The position numbers were made by a program, and so were the translations under genes. From Podarcis erhardii (lineage: Eukaryota): a stretch of DNA of 64,000 nucleotides. The notes under the pieces were generated by a model. That model searched no databases. It had not been told where the DNA came from and worked only from the letters and a program-made list of their open reading frames with translations. Below, one piece after another: positions 5,382 to 64,000 of the stretch; position 1 is the first letter of the stretch, and each line of letters opens with the position of its first letter. The DNA is taken from assembly GCA_964252035.1 (NCBI GenBank), contig OZ176211.1, one strand, 5' to 3'.

Positions 5382-5735
5382 CAGTGGTGCCTCGCAAGAC
5401 GAAATTAATCCGTTCCGTGAGGCTCTTCGTATAGCGGTTTTTACGTCTTGCGAAGCAAGCCCATTGACAGCTTAGCGGATTAGCGCTATTAGCGGTTTAG
5501 CGGCTTTTAGCGATCAGCTGTTAAGCGGCTTATCAGCAGATCAGCTGATAAGCGGCTTAGCGGCTTAGGAAAAGGGGGAAAAGGGGAAAAAAGCCCGCAG
5601 GAACTCGCAAGACATTTCGTCTTGCGAAGCAAGCCCATAGGGAAATTCGTTTTGCAAAGCGCCTCCAAAACGGAAAACCCTTTCGTCTAGCGGGTTTTCC
5701 GTCTTGCGAGGCGTTCGTCTTGCGGGGCACCACTG
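5382..5735. mobile_element. Tigger-type MITE of a second family with internal TTAGCGG-like repeats
   Basis: 22-bp TIRs cagtggtgcctcgcaagacgaa / ttcgtcttgcggggcaccactg (1 mismatch), TA TSD, CpG-rich. Confidence 0.9.
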
Positions 5736-19859: not shown

Positions 19860-23360
<3,501 letters not shown>

Positions 23361-40638: not shown

Positions 40639-42304
40639 GTTTAAAGTGGGTCTGCAAGGCAAAAAAACCCCAAAGACCTGTTTGCAGCTTGCTACCCATT
40701 CAAAACTGCTTTGATGTAAATCATGCCAGTGAGATGCTTTAGCTTTCACTTGGGTTTTGGCCAAGAACTATCTCCTTCCTTATTACCACTATGTATTGCT
40801 CTGCTCTTTCTCGTGTGCTAAACTGCCCTTGGCTCTCTGTTGCTCCAGGGCTGCTTGTCCCCTGGAGTGGATCAAAATATGGTTTGTTACTGTAAATTGC
40901 TGATATACACTATCAAGGAGCCCAACACATGTGCTACTAGGTGACTCTTGAGAGTCTCCAGTATACAAGGCTACAAAATGCAAGCAATGGTTTGCTGAAA
41001 AGCAGCTTTGTTCATGTGTATCATATAAAGCTAGAAGCTTTATACTGTATAAGCTTTATATACCTGTTTAGGGAAGTTTTTAATGTTTGAATTTCTATGC
41101 TGTTTTTAATGTTCTGTTGAAAAGAGTGGCTGGGGAAAACCAGCCAGATGGGCGGGGTAGAAATGATAAATTATTATTATTACCACCACCACACGATTCA
41201 CACAGCTCACAAAAGAGAAAAAAAATATAACTGCGGAAAGTGTTTAAAATCAAGCCATTCCTCTTTGGAGCCAGCCCCGCTGCCCAAGAAATACTCTGTG
41301 TGTTTGGCCACAAGGATTCTGAATAAGATCACAATGTGAAGTAAGCATTTCATCTAACAGTACACAGGTAGTGCAGAGATGGGGTAAATGAAGTTAAATG
41401 GCACAGGAAGAATGGGTGCTGATATGTGAAAAATTTAAGCTAGGTAGCGCCTTTACTGATCAAGTCACCCAAAAAGCTTATTAAAAAATCCAATGACTTA
41501 AGCTCAGTTGTGTGTCCTGAAGCTAATTACATGGAGATCCAGTTGGCATTTCCCTTTTTAAGGTGCGGTGACCAGAACTGTACATATATACAGGTGTTTT
41601 CTATAAAAGATCAACATTTTTTTTCATGTACTGGATTTTCCAGCAACAGTTGTAAGAGAAGACAGCAAGACAGGCAAAATAATTGATATAATCAAGGCAG
41701 CTGGAGAACTATGGGATAAAGTAATGCAATATATTGGCTAGAAATTGTTCCTATCAACAAGATATGACACATTATTAACTCAGGCATAAGACTGAAGGGT
41801 CAACCTTTCAGGGTCACTCGGAGGACAGGTTAAAAGAAACACAACAGACAAAAGAAGAAGAATCACAAAGCAACTTCCATATTTTACAAACACAGAAGTT
41901 CATGGATATCTGAAGAACTGCAAGTTGGTGTCCCTATTCTTGAAAAATTGAGAAATTCTGTGTCACATTAAATGGCTATTGTGCTGGAATCAGAGTTAGC
42001 TTATTGGAAATACTGAAAACCCTTCAGGGGAGTTCTTAGAATACTTGATTCTTCTTCTGCCGAAGGACAATCAACTGTTATTTCTATCCCTCTACTTTTT
42101 TCCATCTAACAAAAATACCCCTTTTGCCTGAATTTTCTGCAGCAATGTCCTTGGATTAAGATCAAAGAGCACAAACTAACATAGCACTGACATTTGAATT
42201 TCAGTTATTCTAAAGAAGGGTTAAACATATTAAACAAAAGTAACCCAAGCAACTCACAATAATAACACATTAAAAACAGCATTAAAAAACCCGCAGATCT
42301 AAAA

Positions 42305-43983: not shown

Positions 43984-46015
43984 TGGATGATTCTCAGATG
44001 AACTCTATGCTTCTATAACAGATACAAAGAAATGCACATCAGCACAGGCTGTTTCTGAGCTTATTTAGTGACTCTTCCTCACGTAGCAACCTCTACTTGC
44101 CTGTAACATTACTTTTCTTCCCAGCGGGTTCTTCCAAGCATTACACAAACATGCACAAACAAATTGTGTGTGTGACAAACAATAGGCACATTATTCTCAA
44201 TCACCCACCCTTCATCCTAAGTTCCCAATGTGGGTTATAACAATTTAAACACAGCGTAAAAAAGTTTTAAACAGCTTACATCACGTTACATCTAAAAACA
44301 TACGTCTCAAGTGTCAAAAGCCAGGGTAAAAAGGTGTGTCTTTATGAGCAGAGGTGAACACTCATCAAGTAAATTGAGCTATACCTTTTTCATTTTCTTT
44401 TTTCTTTTATTTTAAATGTAGTTCGAAGGACCCTTCAAGTTAAGCTCTTTACATATTAAAAGGCTTAAGAGACAAGACCCCCTCTGTCCTAACCAACAAC
44501 AGAGATGTTGCCTCACCTTTCATCCCAGGCTAAATTGCAGTTACACATTTTCTGAAACAGAGCTGCCGGTGTAAAAATAGTTACCTAATGTAACAGGCTC
44601 CACTTCCGAGGCATACACTACAATGATATATGGACTGCAAATATGCAACAGAAAACCATCACTCAACAGCTCACTCTAATGGTCGTCTCTAATCCACTAA
44701 TACATTTTGTGAAGGATAAAACGGCACCAGGGTAACAACAGTGAGGACTGTGGAGACCGGTGAATGCTGATCATCAACCAGAAGGTGTAGGGTACAGGCA
44801 CTACAAAGCCTTCATCCTTTTCTGAATGCATGCTATTTTAAACTAAGTAGTCTGGAAGTAATACATTTTCAGCACTCTGCAGCAGGTGCTAAAACCTGCA
44901 GTACAGCCAGAAAGTGGTACATTAGCTTCTTTAAACTTCTTGTAGTCAAGCAGAGGGAGCAAGAAAACAAAGGAGTGGCCACAGTTAATTTCTCTCCACT
45001 CCAGACTGCCACCTATCACCAAAAATGGGAAGGAAGCATAGTTGTTTCTTTCAGCAGGTTTTAATTTTTTTATTTTGCAAAACCAATACCTCCAAGGTTT
45101 GTCAGAAAGGGCACTGAAGCTAATTTTTCTATTTTGGAAGTTTTTCTGTGTAATGGCGGGGGTGGGGGGTTAGTTGGTTGGTTGGTAAGGCAACAGGGGT
45201 AATAATCTGCTTCAGTGTTACATTTAGTTTCCTATGGATTGGCCTCAAAATAAGTATGAGTTTCCTGCATACCACTGTGACCTGGTATCAAACAACCCTC
45301 AGAGAATCAAATTGAGAAAGGAGTATTTCTTTTAAAGTGCTAGGATCTATAACGTTCTAGCCAAAGGGAGCTGTTCCTGCTGTTCAACATACTGAGACAA
45401 GAATTTAAGAAAACTGATCTCTCCCAATGATCTTTATGACAGATTGTTATTTTAAATCTGAAGACTAAGGAACTAAAAAACAAAACAAAAACAATTTGAC
45501 TATACCAAGTATAGAGTCAGAGAGTGATAAACACTTTGATCGAAACATTTTATCCCAAAGCTGTCCAAGCAGAGAGCAGGATGGCAAAAAATTATGAGTT
45601 AAAGATGACAAAATAATAAAAACTAGAAAGGTTTTTAGATACAACGCTGCTCACCTTGGGGAGAACACTAGCCAGTTCAAACCTGTCTTTTCAGAAATAA
45701 ACTACCACCTTACAGGGAAGTGATCAGAAGCAAATTTCTGAGCAACCACGACTACTGTCTCCATATTCACAGGAAACACCACACAACAGAAGCCCTGTTT
45801 AGATATTTAAACTTGCTCGTTCTCCACTAGGTGAGTGGGGATGTGCTAAATAATTCTATTCCTCCATCCCATTCCTGAAAGTCCCATAGTACTCCACATG
45901 TTGAGGCTGAATTTATGCAATTGTGCAGATTCCCCACTTGATTTAGTATCTAGGTTCTAAATCACAGGAGGAGCCTGAGGACCACCAGCTCCCACTACAA
46001 ACTTTCACCCTACAA

Positions 46016-46151
46016 CAGGCTTCCTCAACCTCAGCCCTCCAGATGTTTTTGGCCTACAACCCCCATGATCGCTAGCTAGCAGGACCAGTGGTCAGGGATG
46101 ATGGGAATTGTAGCCTCAAAACATCTGGAGAGCCGAGGTTGAGGAAGCCTG
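46016..46151. mobile_element. hAT-Charlie-type palindromic MITE
   Basis: Perfect 17-bp TIR caggcttcctcaacctc and perfect 8-bp TSD ccctacaa (46008-46015, 46152-46159). Confidence 0.95.
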
Positions 46152-48999
46152 CCCTACAATGTAGATGGGCCTGTCATGGTGATGTGATGTGATGTAGTGG
46201 GCTTAGTATGTGTATACCTGCTGTACCCTACTTGCATAATTGAGAACACAAGTTTATAAACATCTGAACAGAGATATAGCTTAGAGAAAAATCTCATCAA
46301 CTGTCTTCCCCACCATACATGGCTTAGGACATTCGTCACAATAATACATTTTGAATGCGTTAAAAACATCCAACACCAGAGAGCAAAATGGAATTTATAC
46401 GGATTGTTATATAGCCCCCCCCCCTTTTGTGGTAACAATTTAATTTCTGGCTTGTTTATAGCGTTTTTAACCTGTGTCTAGATCCACCCTTAATTTCCCC
46501 CCAGTAAGAGTTAGTTTTAACTTTCGTTAACATAGATGTAAAACCGATTCACAATGAGCTCCACCACAGATTACTATAAAATGCACAGTATTTTGTAGTA
46601 ATGAATCTCTTCCTGTGACACATGCATGCATCCACATGGATACCAAGTAGTTCTGGTGTCAGGACACCTACACAGATACATTCAACTCCCATGCAAATTA
46701 CACCTGAAATAATATTTAGATGACATCATATGAATGTGAAACCATTAGTAATGCATTTTAGGTTCAAAAGCGGCAGGATTTAAAAATCCTTCCTTTCTAA
46801 CTAAAATAAAAGTGGAGAAATATCAGAGGACAAGGGCATGTAAATTGATTAGTGATGTGAACAAATAAACTCAATGCATGCTTTTTAAGTACCACACAAA
46901 AGGAGAGCACTTGGATGAAAAAGAAACTTGAGGAAATAGGAATCCTAACATTATTGCTTTTGGGAAACAAAGTTGCTTAGCATCTTAAGTTTATAGTGGC
47001 ATGAGATTACCTGTTGCAACAGGCTTAACAGCACTACTCTTCCAGAGTTCATAAGTTTGCAGCATGACTCCTCTTCAGGAATTCACATTTAACATGCAAA
47101 AGAACAAGCGGTAGTGATCTGGGTGAGCCCCAGCTAATGTGTAATTGATGTTAAGCAGTTTCCGTGTGTATAGGGATGGGAACTCTCATCAAGTAAAGCA
47201 GCCCCTTTCAGATTAATGACACTCATACATTAGCCAGGCACACTCTGCAGCCAATGCAGTGTAACCGGGGGCGGGGGTAGGGCTTGACAGACTGCTTGCC
47301 CCTTGTGAGTTCAAACAAAATGCCTTAAAATGGTGAAGATTCTCAATCATTCCAAGTGCCTGTAAATTTCAGATGAGACAGGATATGGAACATTTGTCTT
47401 ACCTATTGAATGCTTTGAAATTATATACCAAACCATTCTGCACATCAAACATTATCCGCGCAGACCAGTACGCATTTGAGCTGGTAAATGAGGAAAAAGG
47501 GAGGCAATTTGTGTGTACAAATGAAAGGGAATCTCCGCATCACAGTATGAGACTCAAAAGGATGAAGTCAAAACTTCTGTCAAGAAAGAAGTATTTTTTT
47601 CTTCCTTGGCCATAGATAGGTGTATTACTTTAGGTTATGCAAGTATGTATTGTATAAGCACTTATGCTTAAGCCTAACGATGCTTAATGATAGAAAGTTT
47701 GGGTTGTACATACTTGCTCCTCTTTGTTTTCCAAGTAAATATCATGCATTCTAATGCTTTTATTTAATTTAAAGTTTTGTGGTGGGTGCCTTCCAGTTCA
47801 TTCCTTACACCAAGATTTGAAAAGCATACTCAACTCAGAAGCTACACACAGTATTGTAGTATGGTTGACCATTAGTTAGTTGTACCACAAAGTGGTGTTT
47901 GCTCCCAGAAAGGACAACTAGGGAAAAGAAAATGTTTGCCTGTTTTTAAATACTGAGTTTTCCTGGAATTTTGGTACTCTTGCAAGACAAACCAAAAAGT
48001 GAGGCGGGAGAAGGTGATGTGGGAGTCATGACTTTTTTAGCGTCTTGCAGTGTATGGGGCAATGGCAATTGCTCCCACCAAGGATGTAACACACACCAAG
48101 ATGCCAGTTCTCCCTTTGCCCCAGTGATTCCTGCTTCTCTTCAGTGTGGGACCTGTCTTTGGCCAGCTGAGGGCTCAACCCCTCCATGCTGTTTTCTGAT
48201 ACCCATATTTACATGCAGCATGAGAGCTATGCACATACACAGCTCCTGTTGATTCTAGGGAGCAGCTTTCTTCTAACTAATAATAATTATTATTTTTGCA
48301 TGCCCATAGGCTCTCTCCCATTTATTGGATTGCCATCTTGCCCTATGTCTCCATCCATTTTGCTGTTTGATATATCTGCACACTCACTTTACTAATATAG
48401 GGAGTGATACACCAGAGCTTAATTCCTCAATTCTTTTTCCATGTGCTGAATTTCAGTGTCCATAGTTTTAGGAAAGATGCTGTTGGATCTCTCTCCAGAA
48501 GCAGACTCATATGTTTTATTGTGCACACCGCTACCCCAACTCTAAATCTTAGGGTTGGTTCCAGTCTAATTAGCTGAAATTGATGGGACTTAAAGAGCAG
48601 CTAACCTAGGTTGGATCCAATACCAAGATTTCAGGAAATACTACTTGTTAATTCCTTGCAAGAAACTTAACATATCTAACCAATTGTATTAAATGCTGAA
48701 ACACTGCACTGGTAGAATTTAAATTTATTTTGAGAAGCAAAATAATAGTTTTGAAATCCATAGCACCAAACAGAACCTGCTTAACCATAATTTTATTTCC
48801 ATATAGAACTGCTGAGAACAGATCAAATATTTTCTACGCCCAGTAAATTAGGCCTGTCCTGATTATGGGGCAAACATAAGAACGTTTTCCAGTCAATTTA
48901 ATATTAACCAAATTTCAAATGTCATCCATATTAGCACTGTGATTATATTAAACACATGCCAAGGTGAAATTTGTAGCATACGAGAATTTTGTTTTTTCA

Positions 49000-49530
49000 A
49001 AGACTTCCCTCCAATGTTTTTTATTATTATTAAATCACTGCATTGAGAAAATGAGTGAAAATGCTCTGGTTTAAGAGCATGCACTGACTTGGGCTATAAC
49101 TGAAGATACAGAACAACACTTTCTTCCTCAAAAGTAATAGGCAGAAAGATGAACAGTTCATTAAAATAGTAGATTTCTACTGAAACACAACATGCAGGGC
49201 TTTAACACACTTCTGTTTTCCTTCCCCATTACGTTCAACAAAAATCCACTTGCTTTAAAAAAAAATTCACAAAACGTATTACCACTTTGGGTTTCCTATT
49301 TAGTTTTCGCTTAAAGATATTTAAGTACATAAAGCTACAACAATTACACCAGGAGTATTACAATAAGAAGAGATGGAAAACTGGTATTTCAACTGAAAAT
49401 ACATATATTCTAAATGAACCAAGGACCTTTTAATAGGGTTTCAGATAACTGCAGGGGATCTATAGGGAAAGCGAAGTTCGGAACTTGCTGTTTAAAAATT
49501 GTATTTGCAACTGTGACTAGCTTCTCTTCT
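49000..49530 (-). other. TRA2A: TRA2A 3' UTR (approximate), AATAAA at 49020-49025
   Basis: Follows the stop codon; repeat-free and U-rich. Minus-strand AATAAA about 510 nt past the stop, and an ATTAAA variant at 49429-49434. The true cleavage site cannot be determined from sequence alone. Confidence 0.6.
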
Positions 49531-49541
49531 TCAATAGCGCC
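49531..49541 (-). CDS. TRA2A: TRA2A terminal coding exon 8 (RRY-stop)
   Basis: tctctcttctttctttcag|GG CGC TAT TGA completes the canonical Tra2 C-terminus SPRRY*. Visible CDS totals 798 nt, a multiple of 3. Confidence 0.95.
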
Positions 49542-49955
49542 CTGAAAGAAAGAAGAGAGAACACTGTAACCATCAGTTCATAATTCCATATTCATTTGTT
49601 TCTCCTTCCACCCAGTATCAGTGCATTCCCCTTCTGTCACACTTCAATTTGCTAAAAACAACTTCTACTAGATACAAATGGTTTACTTAGGGTTGCAATC
49701 CTATGGTCCTTGTGAAGGTGTTGCACGCGCTATAGGATTTTGCGGATCCCCGTCTGCAAGTGGAGAGGGAGATCCACAGACGGAACAGGAGCTCTGAACA
49801 TGGTATCCTTGCTACTGTCTAATCACTAGAGGATATCCATAAGGCAAATTGGAAAGACTTTTTAAAGGGGGTGGGGCGGGCGGTAAGCCTGGCAGTGCTT
49901 TGATTTGATGTTTCCTCTGCTGTAACCGCTCTGGTGAGACTGCTGTTATACTTAC

Positions 49956-50023
49956 TTGGGCTGTAGGAACGGGATCTTGACCGTGATCTGTAACGACTAT
50001 AGTAAGGTGAAGGTGATCGCCTC
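49956..50023 (-). CDS. TRA2A: TRA2A coding exon 7 (RS2 domain)
   Basis: cttcaaag|G AGG CGA TCA...AGC CCA A|gtaagt = RRSPSPYYSRYRSRSRSRSYSP; 68 nt, phase 2 to 1. Confidence 0.96.
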
Positions 50024-51584
50024 CTTTGAAGAAAGTATACAAATCCATTTGTTAGCATTTGTCAAGAGTTTAAAAAATATTGTCAAATAATTTGTACAGC
50101 ATACACATTTTTACCAAATGGAAGAACCAAGCTTCATTTGCATGGTTTCTTTCTCCCCCACAGAATATTGGACAAATTTAAAGACACCTATTTTTAAATA
50201 ATATTCCACAGTGATTTAAGGTGCTGATTAATATGGAAACATTGTTTTTACAAGCCATAAGACATTAACAGATTAAGAGAAAACACATACACACACACAC
50301 AAACCTCTTTTTCACATAAGTCTGTATCTTTAAGCTCTCATAAGTATCTACTGTTATACCTGACCAAATGTAAGGCAGACTAATTTCTGGGTACCATACT
50401 CATATGGGCATGTTATTTTCACCCTCAAACGTGCTCCTGCAGCTGCAACAAATAGTGGTTCTTGTGCCAAAGAAACCTGGAGTTGAAAGGGACTACAAAG
50501 ATAATCTAGTCCTCCTCAACCCAGTCATTTCAACACCAACGTCATATGGCACACTAAGTTGTAATACTACATAAACACAACTTGCTATCCAAGCTCCCTG
50601 GTTAGAAGAAAGGTTGGATAAGTTTGATTTTCAGAGAGATGTAACTAGACTGGTGTGAAAAAAACACATATATGATTACAACATGCTACTGTAAACTGTT
50701 GACCATAGGTTAGCTTTTATATGGAATAGTTTTAATTCCCTGTTTTATCAGGTACTGGGTTTTTTTGTTTTCTCGGTTCTAAGATGTTTAAGCTATTTTA
50801 CTTGGCTGATTTGGCTTTAATTATTTCGTTTCAAAATATTTATTGTTATATGCTTTGAGACTACTGCAGAGTTTGTAAAACAGGCTAAACATGCTTTAAT
50901 AAATTGGAAAGCAGTTATATGGATGCAATAATCTTATTTGCAACAAACCATAAATCACTATACAAACTATAGATCACTATATGAACTAACAGAATTTTTG
51001 AAGACTATAAACTTATCTCAAAATTTCTATCCCTAGGGGCTCCTTGAGGGCTAAAATTAGTGGGGCCCACCAGTCACAAAATGGTAGTGGAAGGATGGAG
51101 CCAGCAATTAAATGATGGATGAACCCAGAGATTAGCACAATTGCCTGGCAATTACAGACATTTTCTATTGACATTTAACCCTTCTTTAGAAACAGCTCAA
51201 TCCTATGCCAGAGCAATCTTCTTGCAGCAGGGAGCTCTAGTACTGACATGACTTTGGATCAGCAAATTCTGCTTAAAGCAGGGAGGGTAAGTGAAGGCAG
51301 ATTTTAATATTCTTATCCCAACCACCCATGTTTCATCCGTTTTCTGTGTTCCTTTCACATTATTTCCTCTTCCTAAAACAGCTACCCACTCTTATCCCTT
51401 TCCCTAGTTTATTACTACTTTTGAAATATAAACCTTTCATCTAGTTTGCCAGCAAACCAAACAGGAATAAAGGGGGGGACTGGTATGTGTGTCCAGAAGA
51501 CAAAGAAGCATAGGGACCAGAAGGCTCTACAGCAATCCAAAGCTTCTCCTTTTCTTCTTGCTCAGTCTGCTTGTCCCTTTAGAC

Positions 51585-51722
51585 CAGGAAAAGGCAAACT
51601 CTGGCCCTCCAGATGTTTTGAGACTACAATTCCCATAAACCCTGACGACTGGTCCTGTTAGATAAGGATGATGGGAGTTGTAGGCCAAAAACACCTGGAG
51701 GGCCGGAGTTTGCCTATGCCTG
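51585..51722. mobile_element. hAT-Charlie-type palindromic MITE in TRA2A intron 6
   Basis: TIR caggaaaaggcaaactctggccctccag / ctggagggccggagtttgcctatgcctg; TSD ctttagac / ctttagaa. Confidence 0.92.
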
Positions 51723-51930
51723 CTTTAGAACCCATCTTTCCCATTCACTCTCCCCTCACACTCAGTGGGCCACACGATCCCTTTCTTCTTTTACCTTCTT
51801 CTCCCACTTTGCATACTACAGCCTCACTCTGTAACCAGCTCCTGCCCATGTGTCTGCCTATGCCTATGCAATGTTCATGCTTGTGACAAAGATTTCCTCT
51901 GAGCCTTTTCATTTAAATCAGAATGCATAC

Positions 51931-52050
51931 CTGTAACGGTAATCATATTCTTCGTATCTGTCATAGCCTCGGTCATATCCTCTGTCGTAATAGGAATCAC
52001 GGCGACGGCCAGCTCCTCCGCCTCCTCCTCCTCCGCCACCACCTCCACTA
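51931..52050 (-). CDS. TRA2A: TRA2A coding exon 6 (poly-Gly and DRGYD repeats)
   Basis: aaaaaag|T AGT GGA GGT...CGT TAC AG|gtatgc = S-G11-AGRRRDSYYDRGYDRGYDRYEEYDYRY(R); 120 nt. The 5' boundary could instead be 52047 (tandem acceptor). Confidence 0.95.
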
Positions 52051-52540
52051 CTTTTTTGGGAGGGAAGACAAGATGCATTATGCAAAATATTAGGATTTCT
52101 CTTATTTCAAGAAAAAAAAAAAACCCCAAATTTTTAACATTTAAACATGCAGCTCGCAGGGTTTCCCATTCAAGGTATTACTCGGGTCCACAGACTGGCT
52201 TAAGCTACAGGATTAGATAGCTCTTTAGACCATTCAACGGGCAGAGTTCACATTTAAAAAGTTATCCAGAACTGTCTGCCTTTAATTGTATTTGTAATTA
52301 TTGTTCACAGTGCATTGTAATGCATGCTACTCAGCAACAGTGAGTTATGAGGTGGCATGAAAATAATGACAATAAGTTTAAAGAACATGAAACAAATGGA
52401 TTTTTAAAAGGAATTTCTTGAGTAAGACAGTGATTAGCCTATGAAGAGACAGAACTATTGCATTTATTGACAACATAGTTTCTTCTGAATCACAGACTCT
52501 AAAATGCAGTTCTTCTGATTAAGCCAGGAAAACTCCTTAC

Positions 52541-52656
52541 TGGGTTGGCCTGCCCATGTAGATTCCAGGGGTGGGCGTGTGTGCTCTCTTTGTGATAGAA
52601 TAATCCACCCGGATTCTCCTGCCATCCAGCTCCATTCCATTTGCATGTTCCATTGC
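52541..52656 (-). CDS. TRA2A: TRA2A coding exon 5 (RRM second part plus Tra2 linker)
   Basis: ctttgcag|GCA ATG GAA CAT...CCA ACC CA|gtaagg = [38 protein letters not shown](H); 116 nt, phase 0 to 2. Confidence 0.98.
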
Positions 52657-53766
52657 CTGCAAAGAAGGCAGGCACTTTAGTTCCAGCAACAAGAAATTAG
52701 TGCTTATTCTCATTAAGCAAAATCAGCTTGTCTTAGTTATTAGTTATTAGTATCCTGCTAATTAGTATTAGTATCCTGCTAATCAGTGGACCGTCTTTTC
52801 TCTAGCAGAGAGAATTAAAATGTCTCCACTGACTTGGGGCATTAAAGTTAGTGAAATAGGATCCCTTTTAAAGCCAGCACCCTGCTAAGAAGCTGATGCA
52901 TTCCTGACACTTTGCTTTTAAAGCTCCAAAAAAAGGTAAACGGGGAGCCATTTCCCTTGAAGCAAAGGGACCGCACACTAGTGTGGCTTCCTGCAGGGTG
53001 CACATGGCTGGGTTACTACTGCTGTTCAGCTGCCATTTCATGCTTTCTCTGTCTCCTACCATCTCACCTACAAGGACCTATTCCAGCAGAGCTTAGTAAA
53101 ATGGCAGGTTCAGCCTATACGACTTCCTAATTACTCACTCACCACATGGCAGTTCACTCAAACAATACATTAAGGAACTGACTCCACATCAGGCTCTATC
53201 TCCAACACACTCTCATGGATGTTATATGCTTTGCCTCAATTAACAGTGAGTTTTTAGCTCTATCCTTAATCATGCAAATTAGACAGCATCAATAATTTAC
53301 GATCAGATGATATAATGATGATTTATTAAATTTCTATACCACCTGTCACTTGAAGATCACAGGGCAGTTCACAATATAAAAACACTAAAATACATTCAAA
53401 GAAAAATAATACCCCTATTTTATTATTAATAATCCATGAGCAAATTTACATAAAAGGTTTGACCCTTGATCCCTTTTGTGTGTGTGGTGGTGGTGGAGAT
53501 TCTTGGTTGCTACCTACTCCATGTCTGTTGATGCAAATATTTTCCTTTTTTCTTTTTGCTTAATATGGACTGGAGAAAATATATGGCACTGCTTTTCCAC
53601 AAATGCTTCTGGAAGTACTAGCAAAGAGTTTGTTTATCTACAGCAGATAGGCTCTACAGCAACCATCATGCTTGCAGTTGTTCAAGAATGCCACAGTATG
53701 CCTTTTTGTGAGCAGGCGACCCCTTCTGTGGACAAAATAGTAGCTTTCGACCCAACCTAAACATTA

Positions 53767-53970
53767 CAGTTGTACCTCGGAAGTTGAACAGAATCCAAAA
53801 ACCAAAGTGTGGCTTCTGATTGGCTGCAGGAAGCTCCTTCAGCCAATCAGAAGCCTCGTCAGATGTTTGGGTTCCAAAAGAATGTTCGAAAACCGGAACA
53901 CTCACTTCAGGTTTTTGATTGTTTGGGAGCAGGAACATCTGACTCCCAAAGCGTTCGGGAGGTACGACTG
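53767..53970. mobile_element. Tigger-type MITE, same family as 12140, in TRA2A intron 4
   Basis: TA-CAGTTGTACCTC ... GAGGTACGACTG-TA; shares cagccaatcagaagcc and ggcttctgatt motifs with 12140. Confidence 0.85.
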
Positions 53971-55190
53971 TATTACATTTTTGGCACTGGACTTTTGTTT
54001 AACTCCAGCCCTAGAAAAAAGGCTTAATCATAATTTAGGGCCTAAACTAGGGGAAAATCAAGATCCACATGTTTACTGTTTACATTGTAAGAAATTAAAA
54101 ATAAAAACAAGAACATTCTACACTTTGATTCAGTACAGTACTTCAAATGTGATTAAATGTGGGCTATATCGCCACCTAGTGATTTCTTTCTATCACTGAA
54201 ACACAGCAAACACTATTTTAAAGAATCTTCTCTCACCAAAAGGTTCATGCTACAAGAACAAATGAAATTCCTGAATCAATGCATCATAGATTATAGCACT
54301 ATTCATACTAATATACATAGTTCCTCCAAGACAACTTGGAAAATGCTATTATGCAAAGGAACACCAACAAAGACTACCATTCAAATTTCATACCTTTATC
54401 AAACAGCTTCACATAAGTACTGACACATCATCAACACAGTCTCCGGAATCAAACAAATCCAAATGACATAGCATAGGTTTTTTGTTTTTGTTTTTTAAAA
54501 AAGAGCCTGAAGTACATCATCCCCCTCATGAATGAGGCACAACCAAGTAAATTTAAGAAGTACAGTAACCAGATCAATTTTCATATTATATATGACTGTG
54601 TACTTTAAACCCGAGGAAACATTCTCAGTCAAAATTATGTATTACAGCAGCCACACGATTTGATTAAAACTATATTACTACTATGCTGATTTGAAGCTAA
54701 AAAATTGAAATTTAATTTTTAATGCCAGTTTATTTTTCAGAAGCTTATGCTTCTCCTCTCTCAAATGCAGTTTTTTCAAATGCCTAGTTTGAAATCCTGG
54801 TTAGTGTTTACATTTATCAGGTATAACCCTACAGTATGGTTAAGAGGAAATTTACATACAAGTGAGCACACCGAGTACACTCTCACAGTCTTCATTTAGT
54901 CTTGATTATTGTTAGCAATCAGGAGGTAGGTCTGCACTGGACAACTGTGGCTGATTCACAGATTTATACAGTACTATTACAACTTTTTTAAAAGAGAGAG
55001 AGTGTGTGTGTGTGCTGAATTTGCCTTTCATTATATGCTTATGTTCTGCCTTGGCCCCAAGGCTTGTGTGACTCCTCCAGGCCTCTCAAATGACCTGGAA
55101 GTCTCCAGGGAATCTCAACTCTGTGGGGAAACCTCTACGGCCACATAATCACTGGTAAACTTTGCAACCTTCCCAACTTAATAAATTTAC

Positions 55191-55379
55191 CTCTTTAGAA
55201 TCATCTATTCTTTCAAAGTAAACAAAAGCAAATCCTCTTGATCGTCCAGTTCGTTGATCATAAACCACATTGACACCGCTCAAAGGTCCGTAACGAGAGA
55301 AGACTTCACGAAGATCCCTCTCAGTAGTATACAAACTGAGGCCAAACACGCCAAGGCATGTATTAGGATCTGGATTAGC
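55191..55379 (-). CDS. TRA2A: TRA2A coding exon 4 (RRM, first part)
   Basis: ttttttag|GCT AAT CCA...TCT AAA GAG|gtaaat = [63 protein letters not shown]; RNP2 and RNP1 (RGFAFVYF); 189 nt. [19 protein letters not shown] is the TRA2A rather than the TRA2B version. Confidence 0.98.
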
Positions 55380-55727
55380 CTAAAAAAATGAACCAAATTC
55401 AAGTATCAAAGCATGCCTAGAACAGTGGCAGTTGCACATTCACTCATTCTTTCACTGACATTGGCAGCAAGGTATTTTGGATAACTGCAAATTTTGAGTA
55501 ATACAAAAAGGGAAAGGAAGATCTATTATGCCTACTCCACCACTGGATCCAATTCTCATAATGAAAGAGGATTCAGAAGGTCTCACTTCATTATGCTGAC
55601 TAGGGAGAGGGGCAGATTGGCTGCACAGAGTACAGCAAACTGGCTGGACTTACTACAGCGCAGCTAATCCTACAGAGGTTTGACAATATACTGGTTAGAG
55701 GGTTTCTAATGCAGTTATGGCAAGATG

Positions 55728-55914
55728 CAGGGGTAGCCAACATGGTGCACTCCAGATGTTTTGGGCTACAAGATTATATTGCAGGGGTATCCAACATGGG
55801 GTTCTCCAGAGGTTTTGAACTTACAACTTCTATCAGCCCCAGTTGGCATGGCCAAAGCTTAGGGATGATAGAAACTGCAGCCCACAACATGCAAAGGGCA
55901 TGTTTGCTGCAAAC
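55728..55914. mobile_element. Two tandem hAT MITE pieces (truncated left arm plus a fuller copy)
   Basis: caggggtagccaacatgg at 55728 and caggggtatccaacatgg at 55782. Confidence 0.7.
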
Positions 55915-57352
55915 AAGAGAATTAATTCTTTGAAATCTGACCAAAATGCTGCATTCTGTTGATGTCATGATGGTTCCATCTTTTACAGCTTGAAACATGT
56001 ATTTACCATCTAGTGATGGGCAGATGGAATGATATAGCATTCTGGTTTCAACACTGACTGGAGACTGTGTTTCAGACATTTGCCTGAAATTCTCTTTTCT
56101 GTTCAAGAACAACTTCCTCGAAGCAGCCAAACAGGTCTTGTTAATTTCCTCAGTGTCTTATTGCAAAAGAGCCATACAATGGAAACATACCTGCTTTGTA
56201 CTACCCGCACATGTGCTCCAAAACTCTCCAAGGAGAGTAGAAAGGATCTCAAGTTCCTTTCCCTCTCCTAAAATCAGATCAGTTTAACAAATGGAGCCTT
56301 AAGATGTTGTAATTCCATCATTTTAAAATGTATAATCATTTCTATATACAGTTTAGGAAATATAGAAACACCTGACTTTTGGCTTGCAGGATCCTTTTAT
56401 ATATATATATTTTGCCAGAGCCAGCAGGCAAAATGGTGGATTGGAATAGGAGTGAGTTACAAAGACTCCTGCATCCCATAATGCCTCAATATTTACATAA
56501 ATATTTTTAATGTAAATTTGAGTAACTCAAGAGTATCCTACCATCCTACCACAAGGGATGCGGCATAGCAAAACCAGAATAGAGGCAAAGACAGAGTCCT
56601 GTGCCCATAATTATCAGAGGGGTTTTGCTAATTTCAGCTGCTTCCACCAAACCTCAATTTCAAAAGGGAAGGTGGGGCCAAAAATAACCACTAAGTTTGC
56701 CTGGCCACTTAAAGTCAATCAACAGTTTATCATGAAATGCCTCTGGCATATAACTTTCCCTAAACTGGCACAGGATAGATGCAAAATTTCTGAAGAAATT
56801 GTATTTGTGATTCCTGCTGACAGGGGCTGATAGTTGTAGTCCAAAACATCTGTAAGACACCATGCTGGGGACAGCTGATCTAGTCTACCCAAATATCTTC
56901 ATACCAGCAAGGATTTAAATCTCATTTCCCACGCCCAACTTTAAATCTTTTGAAAGCTATTAGATATCAAAGTTGTCTGTTCTTGCAAAGAACTACACAC
57001 CTCTTGGGTTTGGTTTTTTTTGGGGGGGGCCTCCTCCCATAAAGCCACCAGTTCTTTCCACCACCAGCACCCCCCGCCCCTTAAGAGAAAATCAGGGTGC
57101 TCCTCTCCCCTACACTTCCTTGTTTGGGAAAGTACTGTGGGGTATTCATACTGCTGGTTGCTAGGGTAAACGCTAATAGACCTGACAAGCAGAAAATGCC
57201 AAGGCTCCTCTTATTCTTGACCGCAGAAACCTGCAAGCTGTGGATGTTATGCCTAATCAACAAAAATAAATTAGTTAAATGGATTAGCTTTTCTTATACA
57301 TATATTCATAGTGAGATTTAAAATAATTTCCCTACAAGCTTACACTACATAC

Positions 57353-57512
57353 TCTGCTGCCAGTGTGCCTTCTTCGGTTAGACATTGGAGAGTGACTGCG
57401 GCTCCTTCGACGCCGGTACTCTGGAGTGTATGATCTGCTTCGTGATCGCCTTCTATGAGAATGGGATCTAGAGCGAGTGTAACGCCTGTGAGAATGCCTT
57501 CTTGACCTGGAC
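57353..57512 (-). CDS. TRA2A: TRA2A coding exon 3 (RS1 domain)
   Basis: atttgaag|G TCC AGG TCA...GGC AGC AGA|gtatgt = [53 protein letters not shown]; 160 nt, phase 2 to 0. Confidence 0.96.
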
Positions 57513-57602
57513 CTTCAAATGATACATTTTATTTGTTATATGAAAAAAACATCTGTGAAGCACCATAGAAATATTGAAGTTTTCATAAATTCATGCATTA
57601 TT

Positions 57603-57607
<5 letters not shown>

Positions 57608-57652
<45 letters not shown>
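57608..57652. repeat. (TA)n microsatellite in TRA2A intron 2
   Basis: Directly seen, about 22 units. Confidence 0.95.
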
Positions 57653-57654
<2 letters not shown>

Positions 57655-58611
57655 TCCTGAAAGCATCTCAAAGTAAGTTTCTGGCACAGTTTTAAAATAT
57701 CAAGTATTTTAAAATAAACGTTTTGTAAAATGTAAATAACATTTTAAACATTTAACTGTTCCAGGGGCTCCCAAACTTCCCCCCACAAGGACCACATGAA
57801 AATTGCTTAGGGTCTTGGTGGACCACTCAATTATTTTTCTGCATTTTGTAGCAATTGTATTGTGCTGTGCTAGATGGTATATGATTTAACTGTACTGACT
57901 GCTTCTTTATTTCTTTCATTGCATTTTATTGTATTACAATTTGAATTTCTTAACTACTTGTGCAGGTAATTTTTTGAGTAATTGTTAGCCATGTAATGGT
58001 GTTTCAATACAACAATTTCGTAAGGTAGCCGTTCACCACAGAACATATAAAACACCACAAAGAACTGGTTCACATGTCATGGTAAGTCACATGTTTCTCA
58101 ATCACTCCTGTTTTGCTTGGTCTGTCGTGGAACCAAGTTAAATCATGAGTAGAAGCTAAAGGAGAACAAAACCAGCCTTGTGATTTGTTTCTCTTGGTTC
58201 CAGGCAGAATGAAGCAAAGCAGGAGTGGTTGTGCAGTGTGCGCACACGTTTCTCATTTACAGGATGCCATGGTTTATTTCTTAGGTGATTTACTGTTGTG
58301 TGAAAATCAAGCCATTGTATGGAATGCCGGTTTATGGAAGCTTCATTGTCACTGGGGACAGAAAGGAGATAGCTTTTCTTACATTTTAGGATCTGATTTG
58401 TCTTATATTTTGTCTTATGTGATGGTAATCTACAAACTGTTCTCCAGTTAGAGGCACAAAGCCTTGCGACATCAGAAAGGAGAATTTTCATATCTCCTAT
58501 AGCTATCAGGGTAATTTTCCGAGACCTTCCATGGTGGAAAATTTTCAGAGCACTTCCATAGTGTAGTTGGTGCTGCAACTAGGCCATGAGGAGGTACAAC
58601 AACCTCACTGT

Positions 58612-58792
58612 GGAGAAGGGTTGTAGCTGCATGGCACAGGAAAAGCTTCACATGCCAAAGATTCAGTTTCAAACCCCAGCATCTCCCGATAGGGCTGTCT
58701 GAAGCTCTGGGTAGAGAGAAGCAATGAGAGTACACAGTATTGAGTGAGATGGACAAGTGGTCTACTGTATAAGGGAGCTTCCTGTAATTCTA
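58612..58792 (+). mobile_element. tRNA-derived SINE with L2-like tail (Squam3-like), in TRA2A intron 2
   Basis: Head gggttgtagctgcatggc...tttcaaaccccagcatctcc, tail gtattgagtgagatggacaagtggtct...ataagggagcttcctg. Confidence 0.65.
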
Positions 58793-58965
58793 TGCTAGCA
58801 GTTCAACCTTGCTAAAGAGCAAGGTCTGACGTTTTAAAAAAATCCATATAAAATATTCTTAAAAAGTACAACTCAAAATCTCTTCCATGAAACCCCTCAA
58901 TACCTTGAAGGCCCCAAATAAGTAAGTTTTATGCAAAGACAGAATGTATAACAACAGACACATAC

Positions 58966-59099
58966 CTGGATTTTGATCTTGATCGAGAGCGTGACTCAGA
59001 ATGTTTAGAAGCTCTTGATGGGCTACGCGATCCTGACCTGCTCTCAGATTTTACACGAGCAGGACTCCCAGCTGCAGATTTTGACTGGGAGCGTGACTC
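58966..59099 (-). CDS. TRA2A: TRA2A coding exon 2 (RS1 domain)
   Basis: tttttgttag|GAG TCA CGC...AAA TCC AG|gtatgt = ESRSQSKSAAGSPARVKSESRSGSRSPSRASKHSESRSRSRSKS(R); 134 nt, phase 0 to 2. Not in the ORF track. Confidence 0.96.
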
Positions 59100-59284
59100 C
59101 TAACAAAAAAAGCAGTATTACAAATGGTAGTGGTTGCACAAATGCCTACCTTCTTATATTAAAGTAACTATATTTTATTGATTGTGCCTGAAAAACAAAT
59201 GGTTAGGCAATACCCTCCAGGACAAACTTCTGTTTAACCCACTGTTAACTTTGCGTGATTTCCTCAAATAGTTCCCTACTCGAA

Positions 59285-59726
59285 NNNNNNNNNNNNNNNN
59301 NNNNNNNNNNNNNNNNNNNNNNNNNNNNNNNNNNNNNNNNNNNNNNNNNNNNNNNNNNNNNNNNNNNNNNNNNNNNNNNNNNNNNNNNNNNNNNNNNNNN
59401 NNNNNNNNNNNNNNNNNNNNNNNNNNNNNNNNNNNNNNNNNNNNNNNNNNNNNNNNNNNNNNNNNNNNNNNNNNNNNNNNNNNNNNNNNNNNNNNNNNNN
59501 NNNNNNNNNNNNNNNNNNNNNNNNNNNNNNNNNNNNNNNNNNNNNNNNNNNNNNNNNNNNNNNNNNNNNNNNNNNNNNNNNNNNNNNNNNNNNNNNNNNN
59601 NNNNNNNNNNNNNNNNNNNNNNNNNNNNNNNNNNNNNNNNNNNNNNNNNNNNNNNNNNNNNNNNNNNNNNNNNNNNNNNNNNNNNNNNNNNNNNNNNNNN
59701 NNNNNNNNNNNNNNNNNNNNNNNNNN
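59285..59726. other. 442-nt N run (assembly gap or mask) in TRA2A intron 1
   Basis: Directly seen; lies 186-627 nt upstream of the exon 2 acceptor. Confidence 0.99.
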
Positions 59727-62700
59727 AAAACTCTGCTGGAGTTTCAGACTTTTAACTACCAAAATTGAATAGCCAGCAGGTAAAGTGCAAATAACTAATT
59801 TATAAAAGCATTTTTTTAAAAAAAAATCTTTTAACTGGTGTAATCATATAGGCTCTAAAAATGAGTCCACTGATTTCCTTGCAACATTTCCCAAATGTTC
59901 TAAATCTATCCTGCTCCTTTTCTAACTTTAATCTCGTTCAATTCCATATGATACACACAGACTTCAGTGTTACCTTAAATACTAGGATTGCCTGAAGTTA
60001 AAAACGTCAAGCAAAACTGATAGGCCAGATTTCAAAGAGCTACACTAGATGCAAACAGGGAGTTAGACATGCCTAATATAATGCCCAGCTCCCCATCACC
60101 CCAGGCCGCATCACAAACTTTTAAATTCCCAGCTTCAAGAAGTTTAACATGCAGCTTGGGGAGCAGTTGTTCATGACAGACAAGTACCAAGTACAACTAG
60201 CTGCAGTTCTTGGGATTCAGGCCACAGATGTGCCAATGATCTAAATATTCCAAAATACTTTCCCCCCCTAAACCTAACCATTCTATCCAAAACCTACAAA
60301 ATATGTGAACAGTAGGGAAGAAACGAAGCCAATTTAAGGCTCTTCTTCAGTAACAACTTAAATCAACTTCGGTAGTGGCTGCCATTTGAAGTTACCTGTA
60401 GAACTGGGACTGTTATTCTGTATTCCTTGTCAAAACAACAGATGAATCAAACAAGCAATACAGGAAAATAAGATATTTGAATAAGCACACTCAAGTGAGG
60501 TGATTGGGCAAACAGGGAAACTAAAAGAACAGATCAAGAATTTTATGGAAATATATTGCATATTTGAATTTGAATCTTCATTGTATGTATCATGAACATT
60601 ACATTAAGATAAATCAAAACTGCCCTCCTTTTCTCATTTGCACAGCAATCTGTACTGCTTTGTCTAGCTTATTCCCTTTTTAGCCAATGAAAACTGCTTA
60701 TTGCATTTATTTTGCCAAATGTCATTTTGTCTTACAGTTCTTACTGTTTTGTTTCTCATTAAAGATACCATTTTATCATTTCATTTCAGACCTGTTTTCC
60801 CATACTTATGTCATATTGAAGAGTGAAGTAGTGAATTTTTCAGAAGGGAATCTGCATACTCGCGATAGTCTAAACGTGCACATTTTAATAGCACCATTAC
60901 TTTCCCCGAGTTGACGAAAATACCATATTGTGGAGCTGTGTCTAATTGTCAAAACAAGACAATGTTCTTTTTTTTTAAAAAAAAAAAAACATTAGGAGGA
61001 ATGGGTAAGAAAGACAGGGAAATTGATGGTGGAAAAATGCTTAACCAAAGAAAATATTAAATATGAAAGTGGGGCAGGGTGCCTCATTTTTCATGCTTGC
61101 CCATATAAAAAATAAAAAAGCCCACTTCATTGACTAAGTTTCTAACCCAAACTTCCCATCAGCAAACTTCCACAAGAATCAATTAGTAAAGGAGGAGTAT
61201 ACTGTGCAGTGCCAGGTTAACACCCTCACAAGGTGGCAGCAAAAATATAACTCATAATAATTTTTTTCATATATGAAATTGTTTCACACTGGCAAGGCAA
61301 TCTTAGGCATGCCTACTCAAAAGTAAGCCCCATGGAGTAGTAATTCAATAGGAATTATCCACAGGTAAGTGAGTAAAGGATAACAGCCTAAATTAAGGTG
61401 CTAAGAGAAGACTTAATAGTCAGATCCCAACTACTGTTGATTAAGCTTTCTTTTTGTTGCCTTCAGATAACTATGTTCATAGCGTAAAAGTGTCAAGAAT
61501 GCAGGACAAACTTTCTGAGCAGAATCAGAGGTATCAACCCTTTAGACTAGCATTTATTCACATGTTTAACTTACACCCAACCATAGGGGAGCCGTGACTG
61601 AATCCTGAGGTGGTCATTTCGTCATCTGCAACCATGGATCTCTTCCTGGCAGCTACTTGCCCAATCCAATCACAACTTGAGACTCTTTCCCAGAGCTCTC
61701 TGTGCAGAGGACTCAGACAAGAGGTCAGGAAAACCACAAATAATCACTAGGTCCACCAAAATTTGTGACTCTTAATATTCAAAATGTAAATAGGTATATA
61801 TGAAGGTGGGAGAAAGCAAAATTCTTTATCTAGTGTGTGATGACTGGGATGGTTTGGGACCCAATATAAACAAATCTACAGGACAATGCTATACATATTG
61901 ACACAGAAGCAAGTACCACCAAATTCAATAAGACTTACTCCTGAGTGTGCAGCCTTAAGAGTCTTGTGAGAAACAACCATTCAACTCTGAAGACTGCCAT
62001 AAACAAAGCGAAATGGAAGGTACCACTGATATTGTAGATAAACAACTAAGTTTTGTATTATATGATGTGTGGGATATATGAACCACCTAGAGATATTTGG
62101 ATGAAGGACAGAATAGAAATTTAATAAATAAACAATAAAATAAACTATTTTTTAAAAGGATTTGTCAAATGAGCCCTTTCAAATACAATTATACTGTTAT
62201 ATAAATGTATACAAATAAGAATCTAAAAATAGTTAATTTTATTTTGCTGATACCTTCAACAAGACAGGACAATAAAGTTTCTCAAGCACTTTAAAATGGG
62301 CCTAAAGAGTTGCAAGAGCAAATCAATTAAAAGGTGTGATCAATTGAAAAAAATCATCTTCAATTACATTTCCCCTCATGACAACAGGGGTATCTATTTA
62401 CCAGCCTAAACCCTAGTGCAGGGAGGGGGGGGTTGCTATGCCCTGGCAAGTCCAAGACCTAGGTCCAAATTCCTAATGAGCCACATAATTTCTGTGCTCA
62501 CCATCATTCAACCTAACAAGGTTGTTGAGAGGTTGAATAAGAGAAGATGAATAGAACTGGCATTGTAAAGCAGTTTTACACCAGTGTGCTATAGAAATAG
62601 AAGTTTTACAGCTAGCAATAAAAGCTCAATAAAGCTAATTAAGATACCATCAACTCCAAATAAAACCAGTATGCTCAGGGGGCACTTGGTGAAGAAGGGC

Positions 62701-62850
62701 AATGATCTGGTTCACAGGCAATTCTGTCTGCACAGAAAGTACTTCCACTATCCTCAAAGAGCACCAATTCAGGAACCCCATGTTCCCTAGAGTTGAGAGC
62801 ACTCCAAAGTTTGTACTAACTACAGATCACTCAGACCCATTGCCTTAAGT

Positions 62851-63096
62851 CAACGATGTCCAACCAGTGGTAGATCACGGGATCCTCATCGTGTACAAAA
62901 AGTTATTGGGGGAAAGCTAAAAAAACTCTGTGCAATCTTCCCCCAACAACTCTGGGCACTTCTCTCCTAAAAAAAAAATTCTGGGCAATCCACCCACCCC
63001 ACACACGCTCCTCCCTTCAATGACAATGGGTAGATCACTGCCAGTTTTTTTTATACTGGGAATAGATCGCAGTCTCTTGGGAGTTGGCCAAACCTG
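62851..63096. mobile_element. Non-autonomous hAT element with GTAGATC subterminal repeats
   Basis: Ends caacgatgtccaac / gttggccaaacctg; TSD ccttaagt / ccttaagc; (g/a)tagatc motif three times. Confidence 0.75.
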
Positions 63097-64000
63097 CCTT
63101 AAGCTATAGAAAAGGAGATCAGGCGAATTCATGAAAGTGTGAGATTCTGCAGCCTAGTAACTATAAAAACAGCATGGTATCTGCTCTGGTCCTTGGAGAA
63201 CCAATATACCATGCTGTTTTTATAGTGCAGAAGACAACTCTGTATCTTTTGTGGAGACATTTTTCTGCCTCTCTGAGGCCAGGCTGGGGTTCCTACTGTA
63301 AGCAGCTGTGCTGAACCTGGCTTGGAGGACAGCTGATTGCCCATCAGCTTACCCTATGGGCTGCTCCCCATGGCCCTGCACTGATCCCTGCTGCCCTCAC
63401 AGCCCGAAAGCGAAAACTTCCAAGGACCACGTGCTGGGATTGTTTCCACACACTCTCTCAGACAACCCTATCTTCCATCCAGACTAGCAAAAGGATTATC
63501 AAAGCTCAAGGACAATTTGTAGCCAGGCAATAACAATCAAGGATAGTGAAAAGCAGAAATGATGAGGAGTGAGGCCTGGAAGTGAATCTTAGAGGCCAAA
63601 CAGAGAGGTTTGGAGGGCCAGATTTGACCCCCAGGGCCCAAGATTCCCCACTGCTGCTTTACATCAACATTCCAACATGGAACACACATTCTGAGTCCAT
63701 TTCTGAATGTATGTTTAGAACCGAATAGCTCAAAGGCATAACTGGAAGTAGCACCAATGTAACAATGTAACAATCTAACACTTGAATTGTTTGCCTTTGT
63801 TATGTTAAAAGCATGGACAGGATAAACACACCAGTGCAGGTTAGAAATATAGTTCCCTTAAATTTCATCCAAAGCTGAGAACTCAGCCCTAGAATTTCTT
63901 CTAAGCATTCATGTTTAGCCTTGAAATGTTTAGAAACAATAAAGGAGGGCACTGCCTTCATTACTAAATAATCAGAGCAAAGGCCTAAACGTCTAGGATT

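What the first reader, a model, noticed from the sequence alone, without database searches (positions are those of the whole stretch)
59100..60000. The only N gap lies where the ultraconserved TRA2A poison exon is expected
Seen: 442 Ns, 186-627 nt upstream of the TRA2A exon 2 acceptor, with flanks in which I recognise no transposon although MITEs are common elsewhere in TRA2A introns. Established: vertebrate TRA2A and TRA2B carry a highly conserved, AGAA-rich, stop-containing cassette exon just upstream of the first RS-domain exon; Tra2 proteins promote its inclusion, which triggers NMD (auto- and cross-regulation). In mammals it overlaps ultraconserved elements (uc.208/uc.209, from memory). 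Inference: the roughly 300-nt poison exon is hidden in this gap and the visible flanks are part of the conserved block. The exon itself cannot be seen, and annotation of this assembly would miss the autoregulatory switch.
Basis: partly seen in the sequence, partly recalled or inferred. Interest (0 to 1): 0.75.

Follow-up and report, generated by a model that had tools for sequence, protein, structure and literature searches.

The report
TRA2A poison exon hidden under Ns

Summary
Observation confirmed. The window's only N run is 59285-59726 (442 N). It lies 186-627 nt upstream of the acceptor of the 134-nt first RS exon of TRA2A (minus strand, 59099-58966).

Interpretation supported, indirectly. 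Papers put the human poison exon (301 nt) 292-592 nt upstream of the orthologous 134-nt exon. In single contigs from three other non-human species, both visible flanks align in the same order and orientation, right up to the N edges. There they are 444 nt apart. That 444-nt block is 99.5-99.8% identical among the three species. It holds a 306-nt AG..GT exon with 13 AGAA and stops in all three frames, 285 nt upstream of exon 3.

The window's flanks are 88% identical to these species next to the N run and fall to about 50% within 150-300 nt upstream. No AGAA-rich exon is visible in the 4.3 kb upstream.

The lizard exon itself was not seen.

The N edges coincide with the near-invariant block, and the N length nearly matches it. 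Other first readers of this scan noted similar N runs elsewhere in this genome (unchecked notes). Known biology; low interest.

The parts
59285..59726 (.). The N run (442 letters): unread or masked; not filled here
   Evidence: The orthologous interval in three other species is 444 nt.
59374..59679 (-). Predicted place of the TRA2A poison exon, about 306 nt, plus or minus a few nt. Inferred by collinearity only; the letters were not seen.
   Evidence: In L002, L004 and L010 the exon starts 47 nt into the 444-nt block and ends 91 nt before the block's end. The human exon lies 292-592 nt upstream of the 134-nt exon.
59727..59877 (-). Conserved intron flank upstream of the hidden block (3' part of intron 1)
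   Evidence: 80-87% identity to L002, L004 and L010 by blastn. Identity is 88% in the nearest 75 nt and decays outward. Alignment A1.
59100..59284 (-). Conserved 3' part of the short intron between the poison exon and exon 3, including polypyrimidine tract and acceptor
   Evidence: 76-92% identity per 25-nt bin. Alignment A2 has 93% mean column identity. The human counterpart is a 291-nt, often retained intron (PMC4737145).
58966..59099 (-). TRA2A first RS-domain exon (exon 3 if the poison exon counts as exon 2), 134 nt, phase 0
   Evidence: It has the same length as human chr7:23561326-23561459 (PMC5425787).
57353..57512 (-). TRA2A second RS-domain exon (160 nt)
   Evidence: 82% nt identity to L002, L004 and L010.
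55191..55379 (-). TRA2A RRM exon (189 nt)
   Evidence: Best solved-structure matches are Tra2-beta RRMs, E 4e-32.

Best explanation
The N run at 59285-59726 hides the lizard copy of the TRA2A poison exon together with its most conserved intron flanks. The exon is a non-coding cassette of about 306 nt, rich in AGAA, lying between exon 1 and the first RS exon. Mechanism, from the literature and not tested here: Tra2-alpha and Tra2-beta bind the AGAA sites and promote inclusion of the exon. Its stop codons send the mRNA to nonsense-mediated decay, which gives auto- and cross-regulation of Tra2 levels. Shown here: the position, the continuity and conservation of the flanks, and the content of the orthologous interval in other species. 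Inferred: that the lizard's hidden letters are collinear with that interval. The Ns are more likely a deliberate mask of human-like (ultraconserved) DNA than a scaffolding gap, about 4 to 1.
For: Geometry from the literature: the human poison exon is chr7:23561751-23562051, 301 nt. The intron to the next exon is 23561460-23561750, 291 nt. The next exon is 23561326-23561459, 134 nt, the same length as the window's exon. The human exon would therefore sit 292-592 nt upstream, inside the 186-627 nt covered by Ns. Orthologous loci from three other species were reached through. Both flanks align on one contig up to the N edges, 444 nt apart. That block is 99.5-99.8% identical among the three, against 93-98% in their own flanks. 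It contains the AGAA-richest 300-nt window of each locus (13, against a mean of about 2.8 and sd about 2.1) and one AG..GT exon of 306 nt, with stops in all three frames, 285 nt upstream of exon 3. A distant vertebrate, L001, shows exon 1 (MSDVEEPQFEGR|GT), then the AGAA-rich block (71% identical to the L002 block, E 6e-42), then exon 3 about 270 nt further on. The window's flank conservation rises toward the N run. No AGAA-rich stretch is visible in 59727-64000 or 59100-59284: at most 4 AGAA per 300 nt, against a background of 2.05 plus or minus 1.47. The mouse exon is 306 nt, and its nucleotides are conserved in vertebrates including lizard (PMC3240583).
Against: The lizard letters were not seen, by instruction. 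The three comparison species are close to one another (identical exon 3 peptide), so they count as roughly one independent lineage, plus L001 and the human coordinates. The N length is 442, not 444. The scan's program labels the N run an assembly gap of estimated size. The mask reading rests on the coincidence of edges and length, on the operators' remark that Ns can be masks, and on unchecked notes from other windows.
Confidence: 0.93

Rival explanations
1. The Ns are a genuine scaffolding gap of estimated size that happens to lie over the poison exon, for instance because of a local assembly failure or heterozygous indel. The hidden content is the same, but the cause is different, and in that case the deposited assembly and its annotation really lack the exon.
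For: The scan's program calls it an assembly gap. Odd-sized estimated gaps are normal in short-read scaffolds. Another follow-up in this genome reported a gap inside a young L1/7SK insertion (unchecked), so true gaps do exist in this genome.
Against: The flanks are unique, non-repetitive and conserved, and such DNA normally assembles. The N length (442) is within 2 nt of the orthologous block (444). The N edges fall where identity among other species jumps from 93-98% to 99.5-99.8%. A random 442-nt gap in 64 kb would cover a given 306-nt exon about 0.2% of the time. Several other N runs in this genome were noted at ultraconserved-looking places (unchecked).
Confidence: 0.2
2. The N run hides something unrelated, such as a repeat or a lineage-specific insertion, and the lizard poison exon lies further upstream, beyond the end of the window.
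For: Exon 1 is not in the window, so part of intron 1 is unseen. The hidden letters were never read.
Against: Both flanks align right up to the N edges with the sequence that immediately borders the poison-exon block in three species, at nearly the same spacing. The exon lies 285-291 nt from exon 3 in human, in those three species and, roughly, in a distant vertebrate.
Confidence: 0.03
3. The poison exon has been lost or has degenerated in this lizard lineage, and the block under the Ns is no longer a functional cassette.
For: None directly. It cannot be excluded without the letters or RNA.
Against: The exon is reported as conserved in all vertebrates examined, including a lizard (PMC3240583). 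The visible flanks, including the last 17 nt before the N run, the polypyrimidine tract and the acceptor of exon 3, remain strongly conserved.
Confidence: 0.02

Closest known systems
TRA2A (Tra2a) poison exon of mouse and human (Grellscheid et al. 2011, PMC3240583; Best et al. 2014, PMC4175592; Pervouchine et al. 2019, PMC6547761)
   Same: Same gene, and the same intron between exon 1 and the 134-nt first RS exon. Same distance from that exon: 285-291 nt in the orthologues, compatible with the N run here. Same size in the orthologous loci (306 nt). AGAA-rich, with stops in all frames and conserved flanking intron.
   Different: In this window the exon is not readable. Its splicing and its Tra2 and NMD dependence in lizards were not tested.
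TRA2B poison exon (exon 2; linked to uc.138 in the papers found; PMC11791180)
   Same: A paralogous autoregulatory cassette at the same place in the gene, with the same logic: Tra2 binding, then inclusion, then NMD.
   Different: It belongs to a different gene. The TRA2A exon is reported to have a higher AGAA density (PMC4175592). It was not compared here.
Ultraconserved poison exons of SR-protein genes (Ni et al. 2007 and Lareau et al. 2007, as cited in PMC11791180)
   Same: A non-coding, near-invariant cassette exon plus intron flanks in a splicing-regulator gene: 99.5-99.8% identity among three species over 444 nt.
   Different: Formal ultraconservation (at least 200 bp identical in human, mouse and rat) was not tested, because comparison with human sequence was barred. 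The uc.208/uc.209 labels are unverified.

Membership tests
TRA2A gene (vertebrate transformer-2 alpha) | RS1 - RRM - RS2 architecture with a Tra2-type RRM | tested here: met
   RS exons at 59099-58966 and 57512-57353, the RRM exon at 55379-55191, and the RS2 exon near 50025. The RRM exon's best solved-structure matches are Tra2-beta RRMs, E 4e-32.
TRA2A gene (vertebrate transformer-2 alpha) | The alpha paralogue, not beta: neighbour of IGF2BP3; named TRA2A relatives | tested here: met
   The downstream neighbour's exon 1 matches IGF2BP3 (E 1.4e-27) better than IGF2BP2 (8.8e-19). The closest named fragments are TRA2A-type (Fukomys, Amia calva) with beta lower. The IGF2BP3-TRA2A synteny is from established knowledge.
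TRA2A poison exon (AS-NMD cassette) | Lies between exon 1 and the first RS exon, about 290 nt upstream of the latter | tested here: met
   By position only. The N run covers 186-627 nt upstream. The human exon is at 292-592 nt. In L002, L004 and L010 the exon lies 286-591 nt upstream of exon 3 (intron 285 nt plus the 306-nt exon).
TRA2A poison exon (AS-NMD cassette) | Exon of about 300 nt with AG/GT ends, AGAA-rich, with premature stops | not testable with these tools
   The letters are N and were not to be filled. In the orthologous interval of three species the exon is 306 nt, has AG/GT ends and 13 AGAA, and carries 8, 8 and 12 stops in the three frames.
TRA2A poison exon (AS-NMD cassette) | Flanking intron sequence conserved across vertebrates | tested here: met
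   The window's flanks are 80-88% identical upstream (decaying outward) and 76-92% identical downstream to three other species.
TRA2A poison exon (AS-NMD cassette) | Included in RNA; inclusion raised by Tra2 proteins; transcript degraded by NMD | not tested
The runs found were Logan contigs only.
Ultraconserved element in the strict sense (at least 200 bp identical in human, mouse and rat) | 100% identity among human, mouse and rat | not tested
   Comparison with human sequence was barred. Only the 99.5-99.8% identity among three non-human species over 444 nt was measured.

The most novel reading that the evidence does not exclude
The hidden stretch is a real assembly failure caused by a lineage-specific change in or beside the poison exon, such as an insertion, a duplication or a 2-nt indel polymorphism. 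In that case this lizard's TRA2A autoregulation would differ from the otherwise invariant vertebrate pattern.
Probability: 0.03. Interest if true: 0.4.

Novelty: already known. Interest (0 to 1): 0.1.

Why it matters
There is no new biology. The TRA2A poison exon and its conservation down to lizards and fish were described in 2011.

The practical points are three.
- A gene model built on this copy of the sequence would lack the autoregulatory exon.
Such findings can be settled quickly by flank collinearity in another species.
- The flank test shows that the two sides of the N run are continuous, so the TRA2A model across it is sound.

Tried and rejected
- **RNA evidence.** They were replaced by N in my scripts.
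- **Mouse exon letters.** I did not fetch the mouse poison-exon letters from the supplement of PMC3240583. They would stand in for the masked letters.
- **Printed letters.** No letters of the orthologous 444-nt blocks were printed or sent to any search tool. Only counts and identities were computed.
- **Human contigs.** L002, L004 and L010 differ from my recollection of human TRA2A in their exon peptides and carry no Alu motifs. The human TRA2B entry was not fetched.
- **Joined protein.** Exons were searched singly by reference.
- **Big protein search.** It was not used, because the gene's identity was not open.
- **Poison exon elsewhere in view.** A scan for a visible poison exon upstream found none. 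The window 60126-60425 has 13 GAA but only 4 AGAA and is not purine-rich.
- **Other blanks.** Rfam gave no family in 45000-64000. The uc.208/uc.209 labels were not found linked to TRA2A, and Ni et al. 2007 is not held.

Full report
**Observation**

The window has a single N run, 59285-59726, of 442 letters. TRA2A lies on the minus strand. Its exons in the window are:
- the first RS exon, 59099-58966 (134 nt, phase 0, acceptor ttttgttag|, donor |gtatgt);
- the second RS exon, 57512-57353;
- the RRM exon, 55379-55191;
- further exons down to about 49960.

The RRM exon's best solved-structure matches are Tra2-beta RRMs (E 4e-32). The next gene downstream starts with an exon that matches IGF2BP3 better than IGF2BP2. 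By the known IGF2BP3-TRA2A synteny, this makes the gene TRA2A. Named fragments agree.

Exon 1 (MSD...) is not in 59727-64000, and there is no CpG island there. The promoter therefore lies beyond the window.

**What the literature says**

The mouse Tra2a poison exon is 306 nt, carries stops, is dense in Tra2 binding sites and is conserved with its intron flanks in vertebrates including lizard, chicken and fish. Tra2-alpha and Tra2-beta both activate it (PMC3240583). The human TRA2A poison exon is the main Tra2-beta iCLIP site in the gene and has a high AGAA density (PMC4175592). Its inclusion rises on UPF1 or SMG6 knock-down (PMC6547761).

Three papers give the human geometry in GRCh37. Only the numbers were used.

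| Feature | Coordinates (chr7) | Length | Source |
|---|---|---|---|
| Poison exon | 23561751-23562051 | 301 nt | |
| Intron to the next exon | 23561460-23561750 | 291 nt, often retained | PMC4737145, |
| Next exon | 23561326-23561459 | 134 nt | PMC5425787, |

The 134-nt length equals the window's exon. Transferred to the window, the human exon would lie 292-592 nt upstream of the acceptor, wholly inside the Ns (186-627).

**Visible sequence**

No stretch of 59727-64000 or 59100-59284 is AGAA-rich on the sense strand. The maximum is 4 AGAA per 300 nt, against a window-wide 2.05 plus or minus 1.47. The exon is therefore either under the Ns or more than 4.9 kb upstream of exon 3.

**Reads**

RNA-like runs exist as Logan contigs. 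I have no RNA evidence.

**Other species**

The RRM-exon reading frame, searched singly by reference, gave ORF fragments whose contigs could be fetched. Three groups of contigs come from species other than the window's:
- L002 and L003;
- L004 to L009;
- L010 and L011.

Their exons are 82-92% identical to the window's at the nucleotide level, and their introns align only in the block described here. I do not take them for human: their exon peptides differ from human TRA2A as I recall it, and they carry no Alu motifs.

In each group, window 59877/59823->59727 and window 59284->58960 align to one contig in the same order and orientation. Both alignments run up to the N edges. This answers the continuity question: the two sides belong to one intron. 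Frame is not at issue, since both flanks are intronic.

Between the two alignments each species has 444 nt, against 442 N here. The properties of that 444-nt block are as follows.
- It is 99.5-99.8% identical among the three species. Their own flanks are 93-98% identical, and sequence 150-400 nt further upstream is 82-91% identical.
- It contains the AGAA-richest 300-nt window of each 10-12-kb locus: 13, against a mean of about 2.8 and sd of about 2.1.
- It holds a single AG..GT exon candidate of 306 nt. This starts 47 nt into the block, lies 285 nt upstream of exon 3, and carries 8, 8 and 12 stops in the three frames. The first stop in the frame carried over from exon 1 is at codon 48.

I printed none of its letters.

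A distant vertebrate (L001, an NCBI assembly) has exon 1 (MSDVEEPQFEGR|GT) at 5513-5548 and an AGAA peak of 15 per 300 nt. A block at 6076-6476 is 71% identical to the L002 block, and exon 3 starts at 6748. The order exon 1 - poison exon - exon 3 and the spacing are therefore old.

**Flank conservation**

Measured against the three species:
- The window's upstream flank is 88% identical in the three 25-nt bins next to the Ns. It falls to 44-60% beyond about 150 nt.
- The 185-nt downstream intron is 76-92% identical throughout.
- In alignment A1 the last 17 nt before the Ns are invariant in all four sequences.
- Alignment A2 has 93% mean column identity.

**Predicted place**

By collinearity, the lizard exon should lie at about 59679-59374 on the minus strand, give or take a few nt. 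About 47 nt of intron 1 and about 90 nt of the downstream intron are also hidden.

**Why N?**

The operators state that N runs are either gaps or deliberate masks. Four points bear on this.
- The N edges fall where conservation among other species jumps to near-identity.
- The N length is within 2 nt of the orthologous block.
- The flanks are unique and non-repetitive.
- Other first readers noted N runs in this genome at the SRSF3 poison exon, in the FIGN block, in enhancer-like intron DNA and over a missing conserved exon. These are unchecked notes, used as leads only.

- The joined spliced protein was not built or searched.
- The N run was not filled.
- No human sequence was used.
- The big protein search was not used.

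**Verdict**

I put the probability that the poison exon is under the Ns at about 0.93. The exon and its mechanism are already known, so the finding is ordinary and its interest is low.

Noticed in passing
window 57608-57652: A perfect (TA)22 microsatellite in TRA2A intron 3, about 100 nt upstream of the acceptor of the second RS exon.
   Followed up: no
window 49957-50061: The last RS2 reading frame runs ...SRSYSPSKYNSS... and does not end with the usual ...SYSPRRY stop (recalled from memory). A further splice is probably needed. Another first-reader note (s1-241386) proposes a 67-nt cassette at 49687-49753.
   Followed up: no
window 21347-21523 (minus strand), 20001-24000: IGF2BP3 exon 1 (MNKLYIGNL...AIEALSG; best structure match IGF2BP3, E 1.4e-27) lies inside the only GC-rich island of the window (GC 0.49-0.58).
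   Followed up: partly
window 63160-63226: A 71-nt inverted repeat at 79% identity (hairpin-like, possibly a MITE remnant) in TRA2A intron 1.
   Followed up: no
window 41626-42225: The AGAA-richest stretch of the whole window (9 AGAA and 7-8 AGAAGA-type hexamers per 300 nt) lies between IGF2BP3 and TRA2A. Most top windows are on the plus strand, and one at 41926-42225 is on the minus strand. Its nature was not examined, and TRF found no tandem array there.
   Followed up: no
By the tool's own words this is no evidence of anything. They were kept out of all later searches.
   Followed up: no
L002 3374-3817, L004 1325-1768, L010 3030-3473: The block holding the poison exon is indel-free (444 nt in each) and 99.5-99.8% identical among three species, whose neighbouring intron DNA is only 82-98% identical.
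   Followed up: yes
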